Of a stretch of 9,279 bases of DNA, positions 40-9,279 are shown piece by piece (position 1 is the stretch's first letter; each line of letters starts with the position of its first letter). A program made the position numbers and the translations under genes. The notes beneath the pieces were generated by a model that did not search any database, had not been told where the DNA came from, and was given only the letters and a program-made list of their open reading frames with translations. The stretch comes from Octopus sinensis (taxonomy: Eukaryota), in NCBI RefSeq assembly GCF_006345805.1, contig NW_021827987.1, positions 1 through 9,279 of the forward strand. Reading direction: 5' to 3'.

Positions 40-62
40 ATATATATATATATATATATATA
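40..62. repeat. (TA)n microsatellite abutting the 3' end of hammerhead-bearing element 1
   Basis: Pure alternating AT run, seen directly. Confidence 0.95.
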
Positions 63-276
63 AAGTTAATCCAAACATGAAAACACAAAGAGAAAACACA
101 ACAACGCGAGGACGTGGAACAAATATAGTATTATTGGACGCTCAGGAAGGAAGGAAGGGAAGAAGGCGGGTTTTACGTTTCGAGCGGAGCTCTTCGTCAG
201 AAACATAGGAAAAGGAAAGATCCAGAGAAGGGAAGACGGAGGGAAAAAAATCGCCAACGGTACACACGCGATACAT
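63..276 (-). mobile_element. Short hammerhead-bearing repeat 1, probably derived from a Penelope-like element terminal repeat or retrozyme
   Basis: Minus strand reads pyrimidine-rich leader, hammerhead, TCCTGAGCGT..AATAC..TTGTTCC..AACT, then (AT)n. The same blocks occur in the same order at 2881-3004. The boundary at 276 is approximate. The Penelope link rests on the known association of minimal hammerheads with these elements. Confidence 0.6.
170..204 (-). ncRNA. Minimal type I hammerhead ribozyme (HHR1)
   Basis: Minus strand GUUU-CUGACGA-A-GAGC(UCC)GCUC-GAAA-CGUA-AAAC. Conserved core, 4-bp stem II, palindromic ACGU stem III, GUA cleavage triplet and 4-bp stem I (GUUU/AAAC). Predicted cut between 174 and 173. 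Confidence 0.8.
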
Positions 277-321
277 GAGGTAGGGAAAGGACATGGGTAT
301 GAAACAGTTGTATCCTCTCAG

Positions 322-405
322 TCGCAATATCTTCATTTCAAACCTGAGGTAGAAAATATTCTGTATATACATTTACCAAACCTAATAACAGCTGCTGCAA
401 TGAAG
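322..405 (+). CDS. Weak candidate coding exon (SQYLHFKPEVENILYIHLPNLITAAAMK), product unrecognised
   Basis: Acceptor-like TTGTATCCTCTCAG ends at 321 and donor-like AAG|GTTTGC starts at 406. The 84 nt are open in one frame only, which is stop-free from 70 to 651. No recognisable homology. Confidence 0.2.
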
Positions 406-500
406 GTTTGCAGAGAATATACCGATTCTTCAGAATTTTTTGGCAACGAACTAGTTCACGAGACTCCGAAGAACCAGTCTTCAAACGATAAAAGAAAAGT

Positions 501-514
501 TGCTGCTGCTGCTG

Positions 515-560
<46 letters not shown>

Positions 561-611
561 CACCACCACTACTACCACCACCTCCTCCTCCTCCACCACC
601 ACCACCACACC

Positions 612-642
<31 letters not shown>
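501..642. repeat. Compound trinucleotide microsatellite (GCT)n(ACT)n(ACC)n(TCC)n(ACC)n(ACA)n
   Basis: Seen directly; successive units differ by one or two bases. Confidence 0.95.
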
Positions 643-643
<1 letters not shown>

Positions 644-732
644 AAATTTTTTAAATGCTAATGAATTTATTGTGTATGTGTGAATGCACAAGAATTTGGA
701 GCGTACAGTTAAAATTATATGAAATTTTACAT

Positions 733-795
733 TCTCTCTCTTTCTCTCTCTTTCTGTCTCTCTTTTCTCTCTCTCTTTCTCTCTCTACACACACA
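733..795. repeat. Interrupted (CT)n followed by short (AC)n
   Basis: Seen directly. Confidence 0.9.
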
Positions 796-874
796 TGCAA
801 TAATTTGTATATATTCATTCATTGAAACCATATATTTATTTGTATGTATGGGTGTGTGCTTATAACTATAGTTC

Positions 875-968
875 TATATATACATACATACATACATATA
901 CACACACATACATATATATATATATATATTATAATATATATATATTATATATATATATATATATATAA
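875..968. repeat. Compound (TACA)n/(CA)n/(TA)n microsatellite
   Basis: Seen directly. Confidence 0.9.
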
Positions 969-1372
969 TGTATACACCCACGCATACAAGAGAGAGGGAG
1001 AGATACTATATCTATCAATACATATATATATTGAATTATATAATAAATGTGTTTTGTATTTATACATTCATATAGAGTATATATAATTTTATGAAATATA
1101 TTTATTACACCCACATGCTTATACAATTCAATTACAATTATAAATATAAACTATATAAATATATATTTATAGAAATGTTTATTTTTGTGTAATATTTGTT
1201 ACATTTTCGTAATTTTTGCTCGTGAATACATTACAGGTCCAAAATCTATTTAATCTCTACCCGCATTACATCTGTACCCGCTCCACACCCGTTTTATAAG
1301 TTGCTCCCTTTTTCACTTTGCTCTTTCAACTTCGCACAATCCCACGGAATTTCAGAAAGCAATAACAACCCA

Positions 1373-1398
1373 TGTGCGTATGTGTGTCTGTATGTGGT

Positions 1399-1443
<45 letters not shown>

Positions 1444-1508
1444 GTCTCTGTGTATGTGCGTGCGCGCCTGTGCGATTGTGTGTGTGTACGCGCGCATGCG
1501 TGCGTGCG
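1373..1508. repeat. Compound (TG)n/(TGCG)n alternating purine-pyrimidine tract
   Basis: Seen directly. Confidence 0.9.
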
Positions 1509-1685
1509 TTAGTCGTAATTGTAGAATGATAAGAACTCAGAGAGACTATAAAAGCTTTTTCAATATTTGGATAACATCACGAGGAATTTGGGGCATAAAT
1601 AATAATGGCAGTTGGATCAATAAAAGCTGCCGTTGGGAATCAGAACGCATAAGAGGAGATAGCAACGGACCTGTGTGCACGTGCT

Positions 1686-1756
1686 GCACAAAAACGCGCA
1701 CAAAATCGCGCACCAAAAACGCGCACAAAAACGCGCACAGAAATGAGCGCGCACAC
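1686..1756. repeat. Minisatellite, ~12-nt unit AAAAACGCGCAC, four near-intact copies plus a degenerate fifth
   Basis: AAAAACGCGCAC, AAAATCGCGCAC, CAAAAACGCGCAC, AAAAACGCGCAC, AGAAATGAGCGCGCAC in tandem. Confidence 0.85.
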
Positions 1757-1782
1757 AACCATTACACATATATACTTATCTA

Positions 1783-2175
1783 TCTCTCTATATATAAAGC
1801 TGAAGTTGTCTGTGTATGGCAGGTTTGGTAGCCTTCAACTAACACTATCCCCTCCGAGACCCTGCAGCGCAGGTTGACCAAAATTGAGAGTATGATAGAA
1901 GAAGGCTTGCTCTTCCTTCCGTAGAAGAAAAATTTCAAATCGAACCATGTTAACACCAAAAATTATTTACATCAAAAAGATGCTTTTTTTCAATGAAAAT
2001 CCCTATTTTTTACGATTTTTTGACAGCTGTGTCGCCATTTTTCGGTGTATTTCAACCAGAAAAATGTTCACTTAAAGAGAATAACAAGCTACATAATGCA
2101 AATTTTTTACTTTTCAAAAGTTCCAATTGTAAAGGGTCGAAACAAATCCGAGCAACGCCGGGCGATTCCTGCTAG
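1783..2175 (+). mobile_element. Non-autonomous Helitron, ~393 bp
   Basis: 5' A|TCTCTCTATATATAAAG (alternative start 1779). Subterminal hairpin CCG-A-GC(AAC)GCCGG at 2148-2161, then CTAG at 2172-2175 followed by T. A|T insertion site with no TSD. All are Helitron hallmarks. Confidence 0.75.
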
Positions 2176-2264
2176 TGTACATATACAGAGGTAAACACTC
2201 ATACACATTATCCTTTAACTTTCGTCTGAGTACCTTGCGATGCATTGTATATTGGTTTTTGGCG

Positions 2265-2642
2265 GAGGCGCAATGGCCCAGTGGTTAGGGCAGCGGACTC
2301 GCGGTCATAGGATCGCGGTTTCGATTCCCAGACCGGGCGTTGTGAGTGTTTATTGAGCGAAAACACCTAAAGTCCACGAGGCTCCGGAGGGGATGGTGTG
2401 ATCCCTGCTGTACTTTTTCACCACAACTTTCTCTCACTCTTACTTCCTGTTTCTGTTGTACCTGTATTTCAAAGGGCCGGCCTTGTCACTCTCTGTGTCA
2501 CGCTGAATATCCCCGAGAACTACGTTAAGGGTGCACGTGTCTGTGGAGTGCTCAGCCACTTACACGTTAATTTCACGAGCAGGCTGTTCCGTTGATTCGG
2601 ATCAACCGGAACCCTCGTCGTCGTAACCGACGGAATGCTTCC
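2265..2642 (+). mobile_element. Full-length tRNA-derived SINE (family 1) with 14-bp target site duplication
   Basis: tRNA-like head with A and B boxes. Exact flanking direct repeat ATTGGTTTTTGGCG at 2251-2264 and 2643-2656. Structured 3' end. Confidence 0.9.
2274..2328 (+). promoter_or_regulatory. Internal RNA polymerase III type-2 promoter of the SINE
   Basis: A box TGGCCCAGTGG at 2274-2284 and B-box-like GGTTTCGATTCC at 2317-2328. Confidence 0.8.
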
Positions 2643-2789
2643 ATTGGTTTTTGGCGAGTTAATAAGGATACGAACCCCTCCGAGCTGCCATTGCGAATCA
2701 AAGGGAGAAAATGAGATTTGTAATCGACGCAAACGTGCTCAAATATCCTACACCCTCGTGTGTGCGCGCGCGTGTCTGGCTATTTCATC

Positions 2790-3004
2790 TTATTGAACCG
2801 TTAATCCTTACACATTCTTTTTCTCTCTCCGTTATTTTTTTTCATTCTCTCTCTCTCTCTTTTCTCTCTCTTAATCCATTCTGTCGAAGAGCGTAGGCTT
2901 GAAACGTAAAATACCTTTCCATTCTTCCAGAGCGTTAAACTAATACACCTGCTTGTTCCTACACCTGTCTTCGTCTTTCGTTTTCTGTAAATTTGAACTA
3001 TATA
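2790..3004 (+). mobile_element. Short hammerhead-bearing repeat 2, same architecture as 63-276
   Basis: CT-rich leader, hammerhead-like core, TCCAGAGCGT (2926-2935), AATAC (2942-2946), TTGTTCC (2953-2959), then AACT-ATATA. The 5' boundary is approximate. Confidence 0.55.
2879..2910 (+). ncRNA. Degenerate or variant minimal hammerhead ribozyme (HHR2)
   Basis: UU-CUGUCGA-A-GAGC(GUAG)GCUU-GAAA-CGUA-AA. Core A6 is replaced by U, G10.1 pairs with U rather than C, and stem I is only 2 bp. Confidence 0.55.
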
Positions 3005-3105
3005 CTATAAATCCTCGAGTATAGTCCGCCCTTGAGTATAATACGCAGGGGATTTTTAGGGGGCTGTACCTCTGAAAAGCCTAAGCCTTGTGTATAATAC
3101 GCACC
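3005..3105 (+). mobile_element. Left terminus of a TcMar Tc2/pogo-like DNA transposon or MITE, other end not found
   Basis: Starts after TA (3003-3004) with CTATAAATCCTCGAGTATAGTCCGC. The motif CTYGWGTATARTMCGC occurs three times (3014-3029, 3031-3046, 3087-3102), resembling internally repeated Tc2-type TIRs. No inverted partner seen in the window. Confidence 0.5.
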
Positions 3106-3396
3106 CCTTCTCTAACTTGAGCCAAGGAGGTCTATATAACATCCTTGGTTTGTAAAACTGTATATGGTAACGTACTTTATTATTATTGTATATATAACAT
3201 AATGCAAACGTGTAGCTTTCTGTTAATTTTGTTTGCAGAAAATAAAGAACTAACAGTAATAACGTTTAATAAATGTTGCTTAAAATGTATTTATGTAGGT
3301 GTTTATGAAAGATAATGTGAGAGAGAGAGAGATAAAGAGAGTGAGTGTTACTTACACATGCATGCAAACAATACATATATGACAACATACACCTTT

Positions 3397-3529
3397 ACTC
3401 TCTCTCTCTCTCTTTCTCTAACGCACACACGTCCATTTCATATACACGTCTCCCTCCCTCTCTCTCTCTCTCTCTCTCTCTATCTCTATCTCTTTCTCTC
3501 ACGCACACACGTCCATTTCATATACACGT
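3397..3529. repeat. (CT)n-associated tandem duplication, 80-bp period
   Basis: TCTTTCTCT(A/C)ACGCACACACGTCCATTTCATATACACGT at 3411-3449 and 3491-3529 (38/39 identical), separated by (CT)n. Confidence 0.85.
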
Positions 3530-3919
3530 ACATACATATTTCACTCCATCCTCTCTTTCACTTTCTGCTCTCACTTCAAAGCAAATGTCACCTTTTCACA
3601 CACACTTACACACGCACTCACATTCTAGATAAAACTGCTGTACGAATTGTTATTTCTTGCTGAGTGCACGCGCAGAATTACAGCTGAAATCTAATTGAAA
3701 TTATCTTTTCCTATTCTGTAATTCGTGTTTCTGATGAGCGTATTTAAAAACCTGATTTTCGATATAAACTTAAAACGAAGTTTTCCTAGCAATCATGTCT
3801 TTTACTTATAGTTTCTAGCATGTCCGAGGTGACATTTGCGCCCCCCCCTTATTTTTTCCTAAATTTCTTCCTATTCTTATGTTTTCGATACAGGAGATTA
3901 AGATTTCTTCCCCAAAACA

Positions 3920-4520
3920 CGTTCTCAATATTTTAATTTTCTCCCTCCTCACCTCAATTTCTTCCTTTTTACTTTTTCCAAATTTGTTTTTCTTCTTTTT
4001 CTTTTTTGTAATCCACGGAGAAAAAAACAGAGAGTACAAATCTTTAAGAATTTTCTTCTTCCTTTTTTCTTAAAGAAACACTAAAATCTCCTTCCCAAAC
4101 ATCCACCCATCACCTCACCACTTTCACAGAGCTACAAACTCCCAATGTTTCACTTTTAGCTTTTTGGAAAGCGAGGAAGTTTCTTCGAAAATAATGTCGT
4201 TTACTTGTTGTTTCTAGCATGTCGAGTTTTCTGGTGGTAGTCTGGTATTTTTTTTGTCTGCTACTTCAGTACACGCGTGAAACATCAGACGAAAGTGAAA
4301 CATTGGGAGGTTTTAGTCTTTGAAAGTGGGTAGGTGATGAATGGGCGAGGTGGGGGAAGGGGCATTGAGTATTGCTTTAAAAAAACTAAACTTAAAATAT
4401 ACATATATATTTCCCAGATTCGTAATCTCTATTTTTCTACGGGGATAAAAAAAAGAATTCGAAAAAGTTACGAATTAATAAATTGCGGTGGGGACGCGGG
4501 AAAATTAAAATTTTGAAAAA
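3920..4520. repeat. Long imperfect inverted repeat: arms ~3920-4156 and 4292-~4520, 135-bp spacer
   Basis: Perfect 18-bp IR CTCCCAATGTTTCACTTT (4139-4156 vs 4292-4309). 4108-4156 matches the reverse complement of 4292-4339 at 43/49. Outer anchor ATTTTAATTTTC at 3930-3941 vs 4500-4511. Confidence 0.8.
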
Positions 4521-4777
4521 GTGATTTCTGAGCAAAATCGTATTAACCCCCCCCCCTTTATACAATGAAACAATGCATAGTTTGTGATCTTTCTTAAGAA
4601 CAGAAAGCACTTTCATGCAAACCCAGGGAAATTGTAACCCCCTCCTTTGACTTTTAAACAAACAATAACTTCCATTACGCCAGTAATCCAGTCCACTAAT
4701 ATTATCAGCTATCAGCTGTGCCGATTCTACCCATAAGAAAAGAACAAATGATATAATGTGGCTGTTGGTCGTAATAT

Positions 4778-4804
4778 CCAGGCAACGCCGGGATGCATTG
4801 CTAG
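4778..4804 (+). mobile_element. Helitron 3' terminus, 5' end not located
   Basis: CC-A-GGC(AAC)GCC-G-GG hairpin then CTAG (4801-4804)|T. Same GCAACGCCGGG...GCTAG|T signature as 2152-2176. Confidence 0.7.
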
Positions 4805-4816
4805 TGTATGTGTATG

Positions 4817-5212
4817 TCTTTTTTTACTCTTTTTACTCTTTTTACTTGTTTCAGTCATTTGACTGCGACCATGCTGGAGCACCGCCTTTAGTCGAGCAAA
4901 TCGACCCCGGGACTTATTCTTTGTAAGCCCAGTACTTATTCTATCGGTCTCTTTTGCCGAACCGCTAAGTGACGGGGACGTAAACACACCAACATTGTTG
5001 TCAAGCAAACACAGACACTTATATATATATATACATATATATACATATATACGACAGGCTTCTTTCAGTTTCCGTCTACCAAATCCACTCACAAGGCTTT
5101 GGTCGGCCCGAGGCTATAGTAGAAGACACTTGCCCAAGGTGCCACGCAGTGGGACTGAACCCGGAACCATGCGGTTGGTAGACAAGCTACTTACCACACA
5201 GCCACTCCTGCG
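4817..5212 (-). mobile_element. Near full-length tRNA-derived CORE-type SINE (family 2, copy A) with internal (TA)n and (GAGTAAAA)n-like tail
   Basis: Minus-strand A box TGGCTGTGTGG (5194-5204), B box GGTTCAGTCCC (5151-5161), CORE-like ACCTTGGGCAAG, central TA/TACA run ~5021-5050 and short tandem tail. Highly similar to 7630-8035. Confidence 0.9.
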
Positions 5213-5213
5213 G

Positions 5214-5348
5214 TATAAACGACGAGCTTCTATCAGTTTCCATCTGCCAAATCCATTCACAAGGTTTTGGTAGGCGCCACCTGGTGGGACTGAACTCTGA
5301 ACGGTGTGATTGTGAAGCAAACCTCCTACCACACAACTATGCCTGCGC
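5214..5348 (-). mobile_element. Diverged, internally deleted 5' half of a family-2 SINE (copy B)
   Basis: Aligns by eye to ~5046-5212 (CAGTTTCCATCTGCCAAATCCATTCACAAGG, GTGGGACTGAAC, TACCACACA) but lacks the ~30-nt GAGGCTATAGTAGAAGACACTTGCCCAAGG segment. Confidence 0.8.
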
Positions 5349-6462
5349 TTATATTTCTTCCATTTATGGACGTTTTTTCTTTTATTTATGATATTTTTCT
5401 ACAGATATTTCAGATTATATTCTATAAGCCTTAATGGCTTCTTTTTCACAAAAATTATGTGAGGCATCGTTCCAATGATGGAGGTGAGAGTGTCTTGCAC
5501 CTTTTTTTTACCAGATCCTATCTCAGCTTTTATTGATTCAAATTCAGAGAAATACAAATAAAGAAGAAAAAAAAACGAATTTTTTTTTTCGTACGTTTTC
5601 TAAAATTCGAATAATTTAGTTTGAAAGAGTAACGTGCGTGAGCTTCAAAAAAATTATCACAATCGGGCATCACCAATGACACCTATGGTATATAAAGAAT
5701 AAAGCGTAGGAAGCTAACGGTGATTCCCCTGGAAGGCAGAGTGTTAAACATGAAACTGTTCTATCTTACTGTTACAGCTCATTATAACAAGTGTTGTAAC
5801 GATGCAGAGAAGACAGAAATTATGTAGGGGCCGAAATGATTTCACTGTTAAATTTATTTAGCTTCGTAGTCTGGTCTTTGCGAGGTTGAGAGTGAGTGAC
5901 TGTATTTGATCATAACATATAGAAAAATGGATGTCTTTTAATGAAATTTTTTTGGTTGTGGCTAATTTTAATACAATATTTATGTGTACATTTTCATAAA
6001 TGTTTGTCCGAGTAGAATTCTACGCATTCGTGAAATATCGGGCGAAAGTGCAACATTAGAAGCAAATCGAATTATTGCCCGAAATTGACCACAAAATCAT
6101 GCAACCCGACCTCGTTTCCGAGGTTATTTTAGTAGAAAAAAGAGTTGTGCCAAAAACATTGTTTATTTGGTAGCCTTTATATATATAGATAGATGATAAG
6201 CAGACAGATAATAAGCAGCTTTCTTTATTATAGTATAGATGTGACTGATTCTGAGAAACATAACTTTCATTATTCACACATCTTTCAAATAACTATAGCT
6301 GATTGTTGAGATAACGTAAAAAATATGTAAATGAAAGTAAAGTTTATTTGGTAGCCGAAAAATTACTGAATCTTTTGATACCCCATACGTCAAAATGGGC
6401 AACTCAATTTTCAAATGCATAATGAACATGCGCGTGCGTGCACACGCGCACACGAACTCTCT

Positions 6463-6683
6463 TATATATATGTGTGTGTGTGTGTGTTTGTGTTTGTCCC
6501 CTATCCTCGCTTAACAACCGATGTTGGTGTATTTACGTCCCTGTGACTTAGCGGTTCAGCACAAAAAACTAACAGAATAAGCACCAGGCTTTAAAAAAAT
6601 GTCCTAGGATTGATTCGATCCACTAAACATTTTGCATGGCCGCAGTTTAATTGCTGAAAGAAGTAAAAGGTAAAATGTAAAAG
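6463..6683 (+). mobile_element. Diverged 3' half of a family-2 SINE (copy C), starting at the central microsatellite
   Basis: (TA)(TG)n, then CGCTTAACAACCGATGTTGGTGTATTTACGTCC, TTAGCGGTTCAGCA, GCATGGCCGCAGT and a GTAAAA-repeat tail. Similar to 7817-8035. No head upstream. Confidence 0.8.
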
Positions 6684-7294
6684 ATATAATGGACGTTTTA
6701 ACATGAATTAACATGTGTATTACCAGTGACTGCCACGGTACAGAATCAATATAAAATTCGTTCTGTATGGTGGGAGTCACCGTGAACTGGGACATTTAAT
6801 ATATGCGTTAAAACTTTTAAAAACGCATAATTTATAACAACTAGTTGGCTGGTGCAAAGAAAGAAAAATATATGGTGCGAAATGGGCTTGGTAGGCAGTT
6901 TTAATGTAAACATTGAGGACAGCAATTATTCTTACAGCGGCCCTCATCACCATATTATCTATTTTTGGAGAGAAAAAAATCCACCAATCTTGTTCCCAGC
7001 TTGCTAGACATATTGTGATCCTCTGTTTACGAATGCACCACAATACGTTTATGTGACCTCTATGTAAACCTGCCTAACCTACAATGGGAATTGTAACAAA
7101 AATCTTCCTCTGTTGTGTTAAACGAAGGAAAGACGGACACAGCACGTTAGTAAAATGCTGTCCTCAATCGGTGTCTGCAAGGCGGGGTGCTCGGACCGCC
7201 TTTGGGCAATGGCGATATTTTTGGTAGGAGCTTCACGTAAGCAAGGAGTGGATAATAAAATTTGTAATAACACACACACACACACACGTATTTG

Positions 7295-7545
7295 GGATCT
7301 TTACCTTTTGACCGACAAATTTTAAAAAATTAATTTTTGTAACTAAACACTTTCAAACTTCGTATACTGGTAGAATGTGTCACATAAAACATCTTTTACT
7401 CTTGGCGTTGTTGAGTAAAATTCTGTATTTTGGAAGTTATTTTTGGTTAAAGTTGTCGTATTTCGTTAGTTTCAACCAATCAATGGCGTGTATTCAGCTG
7501 AATAAAATTACTGCTGTTGTTTGTCAACAATTTCCGGCGGTGATT
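7295..7545 (+). mobile_element. Left-end fragment of a MITE related to 8120-8562
   Basis: Starts GGATCTTT. 7339-7380 matches 8164-8205 at 41/42, and TTTCAACCAATCAATG is also shared. No right TIR. The segment 7496-7545 is assigned only tentatively. Confidence 0.7.
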
Positions 7546-7576
7546 ATGACGTTTCGGACATAGTCCTTCGTCAGAT
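7546..7576 (-). ncRNA. Minimal type I hammerhead ribozyme (HHR3) with canonical GUC triplet
   Basis: Minus strand AU-CUGACGA-A-GGAC(UAU)GUCC-GAAA-CGUC-AU. Intact core and 4-bp stem II, but stem I is only 2 bp in this copy. Predicted cut between 7548 and 7547. Confidence 0.7.
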
Positions 7577-7629
7577 GCATGAGGGAAATCCAGGAGAAAC
7601 GAAACAAGGACAAGAAAAAGTGAGAGTGA
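7546..7629 (-). mobile_element. Fragment of hammerhead-bearing repeat 3 (leader plus ribozyme only)
   Basis: Plus-strand flank GAAATCCAGGAGAA (7586-7599) parallels GAAAGATCCAGAGAA (215-229) of element 1. The downstream TCCWGAGCGT block is absent. Confidence 0.5.
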
Positions 7630-8035
7630 TACCAACCACATAATTGTGGGTTCAGTCCGACTGCATTGCAACTTGGGAAAGTGTCTTCTACTATAGCCTC
7701 GGGCCGACCAAAGCCTTGTGAGTGGATTTGGTAGACGGAAACTGAAAGAAGCCCGTAGTATATATCATATATATATATATATATATATATATTAATATAT
7801 AGATAGATAGATAGATATGTGTGTTTGTGTATGTTCCCCCCCCACCATCGCTTGACAACCGATGCTGGTGTGTTTGCGTCCCCGTAAGCTAGCGGTTCGG
7901 CAAACGCGACCGATAGAATAAGTATTAGGCTTACAAAGAATAAGTCCTGGGGTTGATTTGCTCGACTAAAAGCGGTGCTCCAGCATGGCTGCGGTCAAAT
8001 GACTGAAACAAGTAAAAGAGTAAAGAGCAAAAGAG
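7630..8035 (+). mobile_element. 5'-truncated family-2 CORE-type SINE (copy D)
   Basis: B box GGTTCAGTCC at 7649-7658 with the A box missing, CORE-like segment, internal (TA)n(GATA)n at ~7760-7817, and tail GTAAAAGAGTAAAGAGCAAAAGAG. Colinear with the reverse complement of copy A. Confidence 0.9.
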
Positions 8036-8119
8036 TATATATTGGCAAATGTCTGAAACCCTCGGTACGGTTAGGTATATTTTTGAAAAGGGAAAAGAAT
8101 GACTTCCCTTGCAGCTCTA

Positions 8120-8562
8120 GGATCTTTTCGGTTTGAACGGCAGATTTTTAAAATAATTTCCACGTAACTAAACACTTTTAAACTTCGTATACTGGTAGAA
8201 TGTGTTTATAAGACATTTTTTCTCTTGGCTTTATTGAGTAAATTCTTATAGTTTGTAAGATATTTGTTGCTGTTTTTTTCAATTTCTGCAATTTCAACCA
8301 ATCAATGACGTCTATTGAGGTGAAAAAATTCTGTGCCGTATGAATATGTCCCTCGTTTAAGAAACAGATTGGGTTTATTTACATTTCTGAAGAAAAAAAA
8401 GATACCCTTCCCCCCACCCCTAACCCTAACCCTAACTAACCCTATCTAACCCTAACTCTAAAACAGATTGAAATGCAATAGATCGTTACTAGGGTCATAA
8501 TTATGGGTGACAATTTCATATGACACCGCTAGAAAAAACTGCCGTTCAAACCGAAAAGATCC
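8120..8562. mobile_element. Intact 443-bp MITE with perfect TIRs and probable 8-bp TSD
   Basis: 8117-8143 CTAGGATCTTTTCGGTTTGAACGGCAG is the exact reverse complement of 8539-8565. Flanks CAGCTCTA (8112-8119) and TAGCTCTA (8563-8570) match 7/8. The GGATC terminus is supported by the related copy at 7295. Confidence 0.9.
8418..8456. repeat. Degenerate telomere-type (CCCTAA)n tract inside the MITE
   Basis: CCCTAACCCTAACCCTAACTAACCCTATCTAACCCTAAC, seen directly. Confidence 0.9.
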
Positions 8563-8684
8563 TAGCTCTAATCAATTTAATTTTCTAATAATATTATATA
8601 ATTTTACAGTTTGATTTGTAGATCTACAAGCTAAAATTAAATTGATTAGAAATTACGGGTGAACTCATTCTTTTCCTTTTCCAA

Positions 8685-9078
<394 letters not shown>

Positions 9079-9124
9079 TCGCACATCGAGTATTCTTCTA
9101 GATTCACATAAATTCTTCTAAATT

Positions 9125-9197
9125 ACACACACATACACACACACACACACACACACATGTATGCTTGCTTGTGTAGGTGTGTGTGTGTGTGTGTGTG
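9125..9197. repeat. (AC)n and (GT)n microsatellites facing each other
   Basis: (AC)n at 9125-9157 and (GT)n at ~9170-9197. Confidence 0.9.
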
Positions 9198-9279
9198 CAT
9201 TCCAAGTTTTATAGATGCGCTTAAGCTGTCGTTACACCGCCCTACATGCAAAGCATTCCATTACTGTACACAAAACAGC

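What the first reader, a model, noticed from the sequence alone, without database searches (positions are those of the whole stretch)
170..7576. Three dispersed minimal hammerhead ribozymes with covarying stem II in one 9-kb window
Seen: GUUU-CUGACGA-A-GAGC(UCC)GCUC-GAAACGUA-AAAC (170-204, minus), UU-CUGUCGA-A-GAGC(GUAG)GCUU-GAAACGUA-AA (2879-2910, plus) and AU-CUGACGA-A-GGAC(UAU)GUCC-GAAACGUC-AU (7546-7576, minus). The core is conserved while stem II and stem I sequences change with pairing retained, which indicates selection on RNA structure. All three have an extra A after A9 and a loop-less palindromic ACGU stem III. Established: minimal type I hammerheads with short palindromic stem III occur with Penelope-like retroelements and can cleave as dimers. 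Inference: at least three subfamilies of a non-autonomous, self-cleaving repeat are present, and this density suggests a very large and possibly uncharacterised cephalopod ribozyme family.
Basis: partly seen in the sequence, partly recalled or inferred. Interest (0 to 1): 0.85.

Follow-up and report, generated by a model that had tools for sequence, protein, structure and literature searches.

The report
Penelope-type minimal hammerhead relics in octopus
The three motifs are real, non-random copies of the already described "minimal hammerhead" that travels with Penelope-like retrotransposons. They sit in old, decayed short repeats of an octopus genome, one has a broken catalytic core, and this is a new host for a known element rather than a new kind of ribozyme.

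Summary
All three strings are at the stated coordinates. A structure descriptor finds only these three sites in the window, against 0.003-0.004 hits per dinucleotide shuffle.

**State of the three motifs**
- S1 (204..170, minus) and S3 (7576..7546, minus) have an intact hammerhead core.
- S2 (2879-2910, plus) reads CUGUCGA, so the essentially invariant A6 is U. Its stem II G·U is a CpG decay product.
- S1 has a 4-bp stem I. S2 and S3 have 2 bp.

**Match to a published class.** Every special feature matches the min-HHR of Penelope-like element (PLE) pseudo-LTRs (Cervera & de la Peña 2014, PMC4209133):
- an extra nucleotide after A9;
- the G10.1-C11.1 pair;
- loop-less palindromic ACGU in place of helix III;
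- a short helix I.

**Context**
- The motifs are the best conserved block (72% against 49-55% identity) of homologous short repeats. S1 and S2 lie in a ~200-bp element that ends at (TA)n. S3 lies in a ~340-bp element with a second, 5'-truncated copy and an inverted terminal fragment.
- A SINE in the window places it in an octopus genome.
- An independent 20-kb Octopus vulgaris stretch holds three more copies, all with mutated cores.
- The window has no RT or endonuclease ORF.

Verdict: a new member of a known kind. Family size and activity are untested. Interest is low to moderate.

The parts
170..204 (-). S1 minimal hammerhead. Stem I GUUU/AAAC, core CUGACGA, extra A, stem II GAGC(UCC)GCUC, then GAAA-CGU-A. 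Predicted cut between 174 and 173. This is the only copy with an intact core and a 4-bp stem I.
   Evidence: 79.3 bits
60..265 (-). S1 element, about 205 bp. It has a T/C-rich leader with a TGGA..TTTCC box, the hammerhead, and a ~105-nt tail that ends at the (TA)n run at 40-62.
   Evidence: nhmmer E=5.9e-32
2879..2910 (+). S2 hammerhead-like motif with a mutated core, CUGUCGA (A6 to U). Stem II is GAGC(GUAG)GCUU with a G·U pair. Stem I is only UU/AA.
   Evidence: (found only with A6 relaxed)
2818..3012 (+). S2 element, the same family as S1. It is homologous to S1 over about 200 bp.
   Evidence: 74% to L001:5040..4899; E=6e-30
7546..7576 (-). S3 minimal hammerhead. Core CUGACGA, extra A, stem II GGAC(UAU)GUCC, then GAAACGUC. 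Stem I is AU/AU only. Predicted cut between 7548 and 7547.
7291..7629 (-). S3 element. The leader (7629..7577) is homologous to the S1 leader. The hammerhead follows, then a different tail 'X' (7523..7295). It abuts SINE copy B at 7629/7630 and a (TG)n run at its 3' end.
   Evidence: E=1.2e-103
8116..8414 (-). X1, a second copy of the S3-type element, 78% identical in X. It is 5'-truncated inside the hammerhead core. Only a decayed 3' half is left (8410..8371, ...GAAGGG..CUUCAGAAAUGUAAAU...).
   Evidence: E=4.5e-82
8530..8566 (+). Inverted ~37-nt copy of the 3' end of X (…CTGCCGTTCAAACCGAAAAGATCCTAG), head-to-head with X1. A shared ~35-nt block follows both X ends (8110..8075 on minus, 8658-8695 on plus).
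   Evidence: (33 nt, 97%)
8417..8458 (-). Degenerate (TTAGGG)n telomere-type repeats joined to the truncated 5' end of X1.
7630..8040 (+). tRNA-derived octopus SINE, copy B. Its head lacks the first ~32 nt and it abuts the S3 leader. Other copies lie at 4822-5212 (minus sense, followed by a partial second unit at 5214-5347) and at 6463-6688 (partial).

Best explanation
The three motifs are copies of the Penelope-like-element (PLE) type minimal hammerhead (min-HHR). They are carried by old, dispersed, short retroelement copies in an octopus genome. These copies are either heavily 5'-truncated PLE ends or short non-autonomous derivatives.

**How it works (inferred from the published class, not shown here).**
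- In transcripts of the source elements the motif has stems I and II around the CUGANGA/GAAA core but no helix III of its own.
- The palindrome A15.1-C-G-U16.1 of one motif pairs with the same tetranucleotide of a second motif, from a tandem unit or a second RNA.
- Stem I also forms across the two motifs.
- The result is a double hammerhead in which each strand is cut 3' of H17.

**State of the copies in this window.** They are relics.
- S1 still has everything the class needs.
- S3 has the core but a 2-bp stem I.
- S2 has an A6-to-U core change, which should abolish cleavage.
- X1 has lost the 5' half.
For: **Shown here**
- The motifs are non-random.
- All the published hallmarks that were not part of the search pattern are present in every copy: one nucleotide between A9 and 10.1, G10.1 paired with C11.1 (a G·U in S2), and palindromic 15.2/16.2 with no loop 3. 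Stem I is 4 bp in S1, within the published 4-5 bp, and 2 bp in S2 and S3 (searches compared with PMC4209133).
- Stem II pairs in 100% of cells across four octopus copies. Two of its pairs are changed on both sides. The covariation score is 0.479 against 0.252 in shuffles (3 of 500 reach it) and at most 0.104 when partners are slid.
- The hammerhead is the conservation peak of the element: 72% mean pairwise identity against 49% upstream and 55% downstream.
- The carriers are repeats with shared leaders and tails.
- The S3/X type shows retroelement behaviour typical of PLEs: a common 3' end, variable 5' truncation, and an inverted truncated copy head-to-head (Craig et al. 2021, PMC8557442).
- S1/S2-type copies end at (TA)n about 105-128 nt after the hammerhead. 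In the Anolis Poseidon PLE the motif sits at the pLTR-ORF junction, reverse transcription starts 111-118 nt into the ORF, and insertion is into AT-rich DNA (PMC11167929).
- The host is Octopus. O. vulgaris has an old PLE expansion and 31 recently active PLE families (PMC13282606).
- The same architecture, GCU-CUGACGA-A-GGGC(UAAC)GCUC-GAAACGUC-AGC, recurs as a dispersed family on metazoan host contigs in metagenomes. The other matches to the same pattern mostly lack stem II.
Against: - There is no RT or GIY-YIG remnant anywhere in the window in six frames. The link to an autonomous PLE therefore rests on motif class and insertion geometry, not on a demonstrated pLTR.
- The open frame through S1 has no protein relative among 1.84 billion representatives.
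- Nearest-neighbour energies do not favour the active dimer. For S1 it is -8.3 kcal/mol against a dimer MFE of -28.3. For S2 and S3 it is about -0.5 against -15 and -25.
- Five of the seven octopus motif copies seen (four of six full-length motifs plus the X1 remnant) have damaged cores. Core-dead versions were themselves copied.
- Rfam models do not match.
- No cleavage or expression data exist for any copy.
Confidence: 0.8

Rival explanations
1. The hammerhead-shaped block is inherited and conserved in these elements for a reason other than self-cleavage. Candidates are recognition by the element's reverse transcriptase, or promoter or translation-start context. On this reading catalysis is dispensable for copying.
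For: - In the Anolis Poseidon PLE, catalytic mutants of the motif do not change insertion in vitro, and no RNA-seq ends map to the cut site (PMC11167929).
- S2 and an O. vulgaris paralogue share A6U and the GUAG loop.
- Two O. vulgaris copies that are 93% identical to each other share U4C, G8A and G16.2A. Dead cores were therefore propagated.
- S1 and S3 share an ATG 6 nt upstream of CUGA.
- Naiad PLEs thrive without hammerheads (PMC8557442).
- The active folds are thermodynamically poor.
Against: - Compensatory changes in stem II and the retained CUGANGA...GAAA...UH core in S1, S3 and the metagenome family are what a ribozyme constraint predicts.
- PLE hammerheads of fungi and Anolis do cleave (PMC4209133; PMC11167929).
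- The shared dead cores could come from local DNA duplication rather than retrotransposition. That pair lies 4.9 kb apart.
- CpG decay explains most of the changes.
Confidence: 0.2
2. The motifs are units of non-LTR retrozymes. These are short tandem repeats whose transcripts self-cleave at type I hammerheads and circularise into small circRNAs.
For: - If SINE copy B (7630-8040) is a later insertion, X1 and S3 become two head-to-tail units about 400 nt apart on the same strand.
- Unit sizes of 200-400 bp and low GC fit the retrozyme description (PMC7229834).
- A 2026 preprint derives animal retrozymes from PLE pLTRs.
Against: - Retrozymes are defined by canonical type I hammerheads with loop-loop contacts and a helix III hairpin, arranged in tandem arrays.
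- Here the motifs are minimal.
- S1 and S2 are solitary.
- Tandem Repeats Finder and self-BLAST show no array.
- X1 and S3 are only 78% identical, and X1 lacks half of its motif.
Confidence: 0.1
3. The motifs are chance matches to a short degenerate pattern in repeat-rich DNA.
For: - The pattern is short.
- Most of the other matches to the sequence pattern in metagenome contigs have little or no stem II and look like chance.
Against: - Shuffles give 0.003-0.004 hits per window against 3 observed.
- The flanks are homologous between copies and between the window and O. vulgaris.
- Unsearched hallmarks are present in all copies.
Confidence: 0.01

Closest known systems
min-HHR of Penelope-like elements (Cervera & de la Peña 2014, PMC4209133; dimer cleavage also reported by Lünse, Weinberg & Breaker 2017, cited from memory)
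   Same: - Type I topology with no helix III or loop 3.
- Palindromic 15.2/16.2.
- One unpaired nucleotide between A9 and 10.1.
- A G10.1-C11.1 pair.
- A short helix I.
- Several sequence families per genome, with compensatory changes between them.
- Most copies are solitary and far from any RT ORF.
   Different: - Stem II is 4 bp here, against 6-8 bp in the Schistosoma and Drosophila examples.
- The host (Octopus) is not described in the papers I could search.
- Residence in a pLTR is not shown.
- Most copies seen are decayed.
Poseidon PLE of Anolis carolinensis (PAc), hammerhead at the pLTR-ORF junction (PMC11167929)
   Same: - The motif lies about 110-130 nt upstream of the 3' end of the inserted unit.
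- Insertion ends lie in AT-rich DNA.
- There is evidence that a dead core does not stop copying.
   Different: - In PAc the ORF starts at stem II.
- Here no ORF with relatives runs through the motif.
- No RT/EN is nearby.
Non-LTR retrozymes of metazoans (Cervera & de la Peña 2020, PMC7229834)
   Same: - Short (170-400 nt), low-GC, non-coding elements with a type I hammerhead.
- They are probably mobilised in trans.
   Different: - Retrozymes carry canonical hammerheads with a helix III hairpin and loop contacts, and they occur in tandem arrays.
- The copies here are minimal and dispersed.
Rfam Hammerhead_1 / HH9 / HH10 families
   Same: The catalytic core consensus is the same.
   Different: There is no match even at E <= 10. 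Rfam-based counts, such as the 235 hammerhead_1 loci reported for the giant squid (PMC6962438), would not include this class.
Athena/Terminon EN-minus PLEs (hammerhead next to telomeric repeats; described in PMC8557442)
   Same: X1 has a hammerhead remnant directly joined to telomere-type repeats.
   Different: - In Athena the C-rich repeats follow the motif at the 3' end of the element.
- Here G-rich TTAGGG repeats precede a 5'-truncated motif at an internal chromosomal site.

Membership tests
Hammerhead ribozyme | Catalytic core C3-U4-G5-A6-N7-G8-A9 ... G12-A13-A14, the A15.1-U16.1 pair, and H17 at the cut site | tested here: met
   Met by S1 and S3. Not met by S2, which has U6, nor by the three O. 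vulgaris copies.
Hammerhead ribozyme | Three helices around the core | tested here: inconclusive
   Stem II is 4 bp in all copies. Stem I is 4 bp in S1 and 2 bp in S2 and S3. Helix III can only form between two motifs. The modelled dimer energies are weak.
Hammerhead ribozyme | Site-specific self-cleavage | not testable with these tools
   This needs in vitro transcription of monomers and dimers, or RNA end mapping.
PLE min-HHR (Cervera & de la Peña 2014) | No helix III or loop 3; positions 15.2/16.2 palindromic | tested here: met
   GAAACGUH with ACGU and no loop is present in S1, S2 and S3.
PLE min-HHR (Cervera & de la Peña 2014) | One unpaired nucleotide between A9 and 10.1, and a G10.1-C11.1 pair | tested here: met
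   All three have the extra A. G-C is present in S1 and S3; S2 has G·U.
PLE min-HHR (Cervera & de la Peña 2014) | Several consensus families per genome that differ by compensatory changes | tested here: met
   Small sample. Two stem II pairs and two stem I pairs change on both sides among four copies. There are two element types and at least three core variants.
PLE min-HHR (Cervera & de la Peña 2014) | Located in the pseudo-LTR of an element that encodes RT and a GIY-YIG endonuclease | tested here: inconclusive
   No RT/EN in six frames of the window, and no full element in the 40 kb of octopod DNA fetched. The literature says most min-HHRs are solitary. The insertion geometry and the inverted truncated copy are PLE-like.
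Non-LTR retrozyme | Canonical type I hammerhead with a helix III hairpin and loop 1-loop 2 contacts | tested here: not met
   The motifs are minimal and Rfam Hammerhead_1 gives no hit.
Non-LTR retrozyme | Head-to-tail tandem arrays of 150-450 bp units | tested here: not met
   S1 and S2 are solitary and no array is found. S3 and X1 could be a degenerate dimer only if SINE B is a later insertion, which is unresolved.

The most novel reading that the evidence does not exclude
Octopus genomes carry a very large family (10^4-10^5 or more copies) of short elements derived from Penelope-like elements and resembling SINEs. Subfamilies of this family kept multiplying after their hammerhead cores were inactivated (A6U; U4C/G8A). 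That would be natural evidence that self-cleavage is dispensable for this mode of retrotransposition, and it would make this one of the largest ribozyme-derived repeat families in an invertebrate.
Probability: 0.2. Interest if true: 0.5.

Novelty: new member of a known kind. Interest (0 to 1): 0.25.

Why it matters
- It adds octopods to the hosts of Penelope-type minimal hammerheads.
- It shows that Rfam-based ncRNA annotation of cephalopod genomes misses this class completely.
- The octopus copies are a natural series of intact and core-mutated variants that were each copied. A genome-wide census could therefore test whether cleavage matters for the spread of these elements, a question left open by the 2014 and 2024 PLE papers.
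- For this window alone, the practical conclusion is that these are decaying repeat relics, not functional ribozyme genes.

Tried and rejected
- **Rfam, gathering and E <= 10.** No hammerhead family matched. All the miRNA-like hits lie on microsatellites or inverted simple repeats and are artefacts.
- **ARAGORN.** No tRNA was called, although the SINE head is tRNA-like.
- **Six-frame Pfam scan of the window.** No RT, endonuclease or any other domain.
- **The 83-aa open frame through S1 against 1.84 billion representative proteins.** No hit, so the frame is not a PLE ORF start that can be recognised.
- **Metagenome pattern scan.** It gave a clean min-HHR family on metazoan host contigs, but these contigs had no RT next to the motif. 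It could not be used to show pLTR residence.
- **Attempts to obtain more octopus DNA through SINE-derived ORFs.** These yielded 20 kb of O. vulgaris, 20 kb of Argonauta hians and a few short Logan contigs. The second protein search was swamped by YIYIYI low-complexity words.
- **Reaching longer loci through neighbouring genes of L001.** Abandoned because the usable terminal exon is only 14 aa.
- **Is S3 an insertion into SINE B with a target-site duplication?** I tested this. The putative downstream SINE remainder is not collinear and not significant, so I dropped the claim. Which element inserted into which remains open.
- **A conserved alternative hairpin as the real structure.** Each copy sequesters a different part of the core, so no alternative fold is conserved.


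Full report
**1. Observation**

- S1 runs 204..170 on the minus strand.
- S2 runs 2879-2910 on the plus strand.
- S3 runs 7576..7546 on the minus strand.

They are not chance matches.
- The plain pattern CTGANGA-N6-30-GAAACGT occurs twice, against none in 200 dinucleotide shuffles.
- I wrote a structural descriptor. It requires the core, an optional one-base bulge, stem II of at least 3 bp, GAAA, a self-complementary 15.2/16.2 pair, U, H, and stem I of at least 2 bp.
- It finds S1 and S3, plus S2 once position 6 is relaxed, and nothing else on either strand.
- In 1000 shuffles the mean is 0.003-0.004 hits per window and there are never two.

Three corrections to the description are needed.
- S2 reads CUGUCGA, so position 6 of the CUGANGA consensus, which must be A, is U. 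Its core is not conserved.
- S2's stem II differs from S1's only by a G·U that arises from C11.1 to U at a CpG.
- Stem I is 4 bp in S1 but only 2 bp in S2 and S3.

Rfam does not recognise any of the three, even at E <= 10. Everything it reports in this window lies on microsatellites.

**2. What the motifs sit in**

The window is non-coding, microsatellite-rich eukaryotic DNA. It has no credible ORF and no Pfam domain in any frame.

The motifs are parts of homologous repeats.
- S1 (about 265..60, minus) and S2 (about 2818-3012, plus) align over some 200 bp. The aligned unit is a T/C-rich leader with a TGGA..TTTCC box, the hammerhead, and a ~105-nt tail that ends in or next to TA repeats.
- S3 shares the leader, an ATG 6 nt before CUGA, the hammerhead and a few following bases with S1. 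It then continues into a different ~230-nt tail, X.
- X has a second copy, X1 (8414..8116, minus), 78% identical. X1 is truncated inside the hammerhead core and keeps only a decayed 3' half.
- A 37-nt inverted copy of the very end of X lies head-to-head with X1 at 8530-8566. A ~35-nt block is shared after both X ends.
- A common 3' end, variable 5' truncation and an adjacent inverted truncated copy are what Craig et al. 2021 describe for Penelope-like elements (PMC8557442).

Within the S1/S2-type alignment the hammerhead block is the conservation peak. Mean pairwise identity there is 72%, against 49% upstream and 55% downstream.

**3. Host and further copies**

- A tRNA-derived SINE occurs three times in the window.
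- An ORF across it hits an Octopus vulgaris hypothetical protein at 79% identity.
- The 20-kb O. vulgaris locus around that gene (L001, chromosome OX597840.1) holds more than ten copies of the SINE at 72-94% identity. The window is therefore from an octopus.
- I built a covariance model from S1, S2, S3 and one O. vulgaris copy. Searched with filters off, it recovers its four training copies (three in the window, one in L001) and two further sites in L001.
- A profile of the whole element finds the same sites and no more.
- None is found in 20 kb of Argonauta hians.

All three O. vulgaris copies have damaged cores.
- One shares CUGUCGA and the GUAG loop with S2. The A6U change is therefore a subfamily trait and not a private mutation.
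- The other two are 93% identical to each other and share CCGACAA...GAAACAU, that is U4C, G8A and G16.2A, with every CpG of the motif decayed.
- All other pairs of copies are 50-66% identical. This fits the old Penelope-like expansion reported for O. vulgaris (PMC13282606).

**4. Structure**

- On four octopus copies stem II pairs in all cells.
- Four of the eight modelled pairs change on both sides.
- The covariation score exceeds 497 of 500 shuffles and all slid controls.
- With four sequences this is supportive and not conclusive. All the stem II covariation comes from S3.
- Thermodynamic modelling does not favour the active fold. The hammerhead dimer has intermolecular stems I and III and intramolecular stem II. 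It evaluates to -8.3 kcal/mol for S1 and about -0.5 for S2 and S3. The dimer minimum-energy structures are at -28, -15 and -25 kcal/mol.
- The alternative folds differ between copies, so none of them is a conserved rival structure.

**5. Comparison with what is known**

Cervera & de la Peña 2014 (PMC4209133) defined exactly this motif as the min-HHR of Penelope-like elements. Their description includes:
- no helix III or loop 3;
- palindromic 15.2/16.2;
- G10.1-C11.1;
- a helix I of 4-5 bp, or 2 bp in Drosophila virilis;
- thousands of copies per metazoan genome in several consensus families full of compensatory changes;
- mostly solitary copies attributed to truncated elements;
- no cleavage as a monomer and weak cleavage as a dimer in vitro.

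The same architecture turned up in my metagenome scan. It forms a tight family, GCU-CUGACGA-A-GGGC(UAAC)GCUC-GAAACGUC-AGC, on contigs that carry metazoan genes. The other matches to the sequence pattern mostly lacked stem II. Acropora is reported to have thousands of such minimal variants (PMC7229834).

Work on the Anolis Poseidon element (PMC11167929) gives the following picture.
- The motif sits at the pLTR-ORF junction.
- Reverse transcription starts 111-118 nt into the ORF.
- Integration is into AT-rich DNA.
- Catalytic mutants insert normally in vitro.

In S1 the distance from the start of stem II (192) to the element end at the TA run (about 64) is about 128 nt, and four of the five S1/S2-type copies end in TA repeats. 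This geometry fits a heavily 5'-truncated or non-autonomous PLE-type insertion.

The elements are not retrozymes as defined. Those have canonical hammerheads and tandem arrays.

**6. Most likely mechanism and its limits**

Shown:
- the motif class;
- homology of the carriers;
- the host;
- the decay state of each copy.

Inferred from the literature on the class:
- in source-element transcripts two motifs pair through ACGU and through stem I;
- they form a double hammerhead and cut after H17.

Not shown:
- that any copy here cleaves;
- that the carriers derive from an RT-encoding Penelope-like element in octopus;
- the size of the family.

The only unbiased density figure I have is three decayed copies in 20 kb of O. 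vulgaris. This hints at a large family but is far too small a sample to extrapolate from.

The propagation of core-dead variants keeps alive the rival view that cleavage is not what keeps the block in these elements. So does the Anolis result.

**7. Verdict**

It overstates the state of the motifs: two intact, one core-mutated, all in old relics.
- The kind is known. The octopus family appears undescribed: no paper in the searchable library links hammerheads to octopus repeats.
- Novelty: new member of a known kind. Interest: 0.25.

Noticed in passing
window 8417-8458 (minus strand reading): About 40 nt of degenerate (TTAGGG)n telomere-type repeat is joined directly to the truncated 5' end of X1, between X1 and the inverted X-end fragment. 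This could be an interstitial telomeric repeat, or a template switch at the 5' junction of a retroelement whose RT family is the sister of telomerase.
   Followed up: partly
window 4822-5212 (minus sense), 5214-5347, 6463-6688, 7630-8040 (plus sense): A tRNA-derived SINE of about 400 bp. Its head is CGCAGGAGTGGCTGTGTGGTAAG...GGTTCCGGGTTCAGTCCC and its tail is (TAAAAAGAG)n. It occurs three times here and more than 10 times in 20 kb of O. vulgaris. ARAGORN does not call it. Copy A is followed by a partial second unit.
   Followed up: partly
L001:7752-8033 and L001:12656-12940 (O. vulgaris): Two hammerhead-bearing element copies lie 4.9 kb apart and are 93% identical to each other. They share the same dead core (CCGACAA...GAAACAU). 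Both strands are open for about 90 codons across them, which is probably a compositional accident.
   Followed up: partly
window 7629/7630: There is an abrupt junction between the S3 leader and a SINE head that lacks its first ~32 nt. Either the S3 element inserted into the SINE, or a 5'-truncated SINE split a tandem X1-S3 pair. A weak, non-collinear resemblance to the missing SINE head lies at 7250..7200.
   Followed up: yes
window 3914-4156 and 4292-4527: A pair of inverted repeats about 240 bp long and 68% identical, of unknown type. It is not found in the O. vulgaris sample.
   Followed up: no
window 1686-1743: A short tandem array of a 12/25-nt unit (GCACAAAAACGC), CpG-rich and unlike the surrounding microsatellites.
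   Followed up: no
window 829-918, 3301-3491, 9118-9215: Sub-threshold Rfam miRNA 'hits' (mir-3149, mir-297, MIR533 and others) all fall on (TA)n, (CA)n or (GA)n tracts that are self-complementary. They are artefacts of simple repeats.
   Followed up: yes
L003-L122 (metagenome contigs Ga0126336/7, OMLO01...): 47 contigs carry one near-identical min-HHR family (CUGACGA-A-GGGC-UAAC-GCUC-GAAACGUC) next to metazoan genes (GPCRs, TRIM-NHL, an ABC transporter). This is host invertebrate DNA inside 'metagenomes', probably cnidarian.
   Followed up: partly
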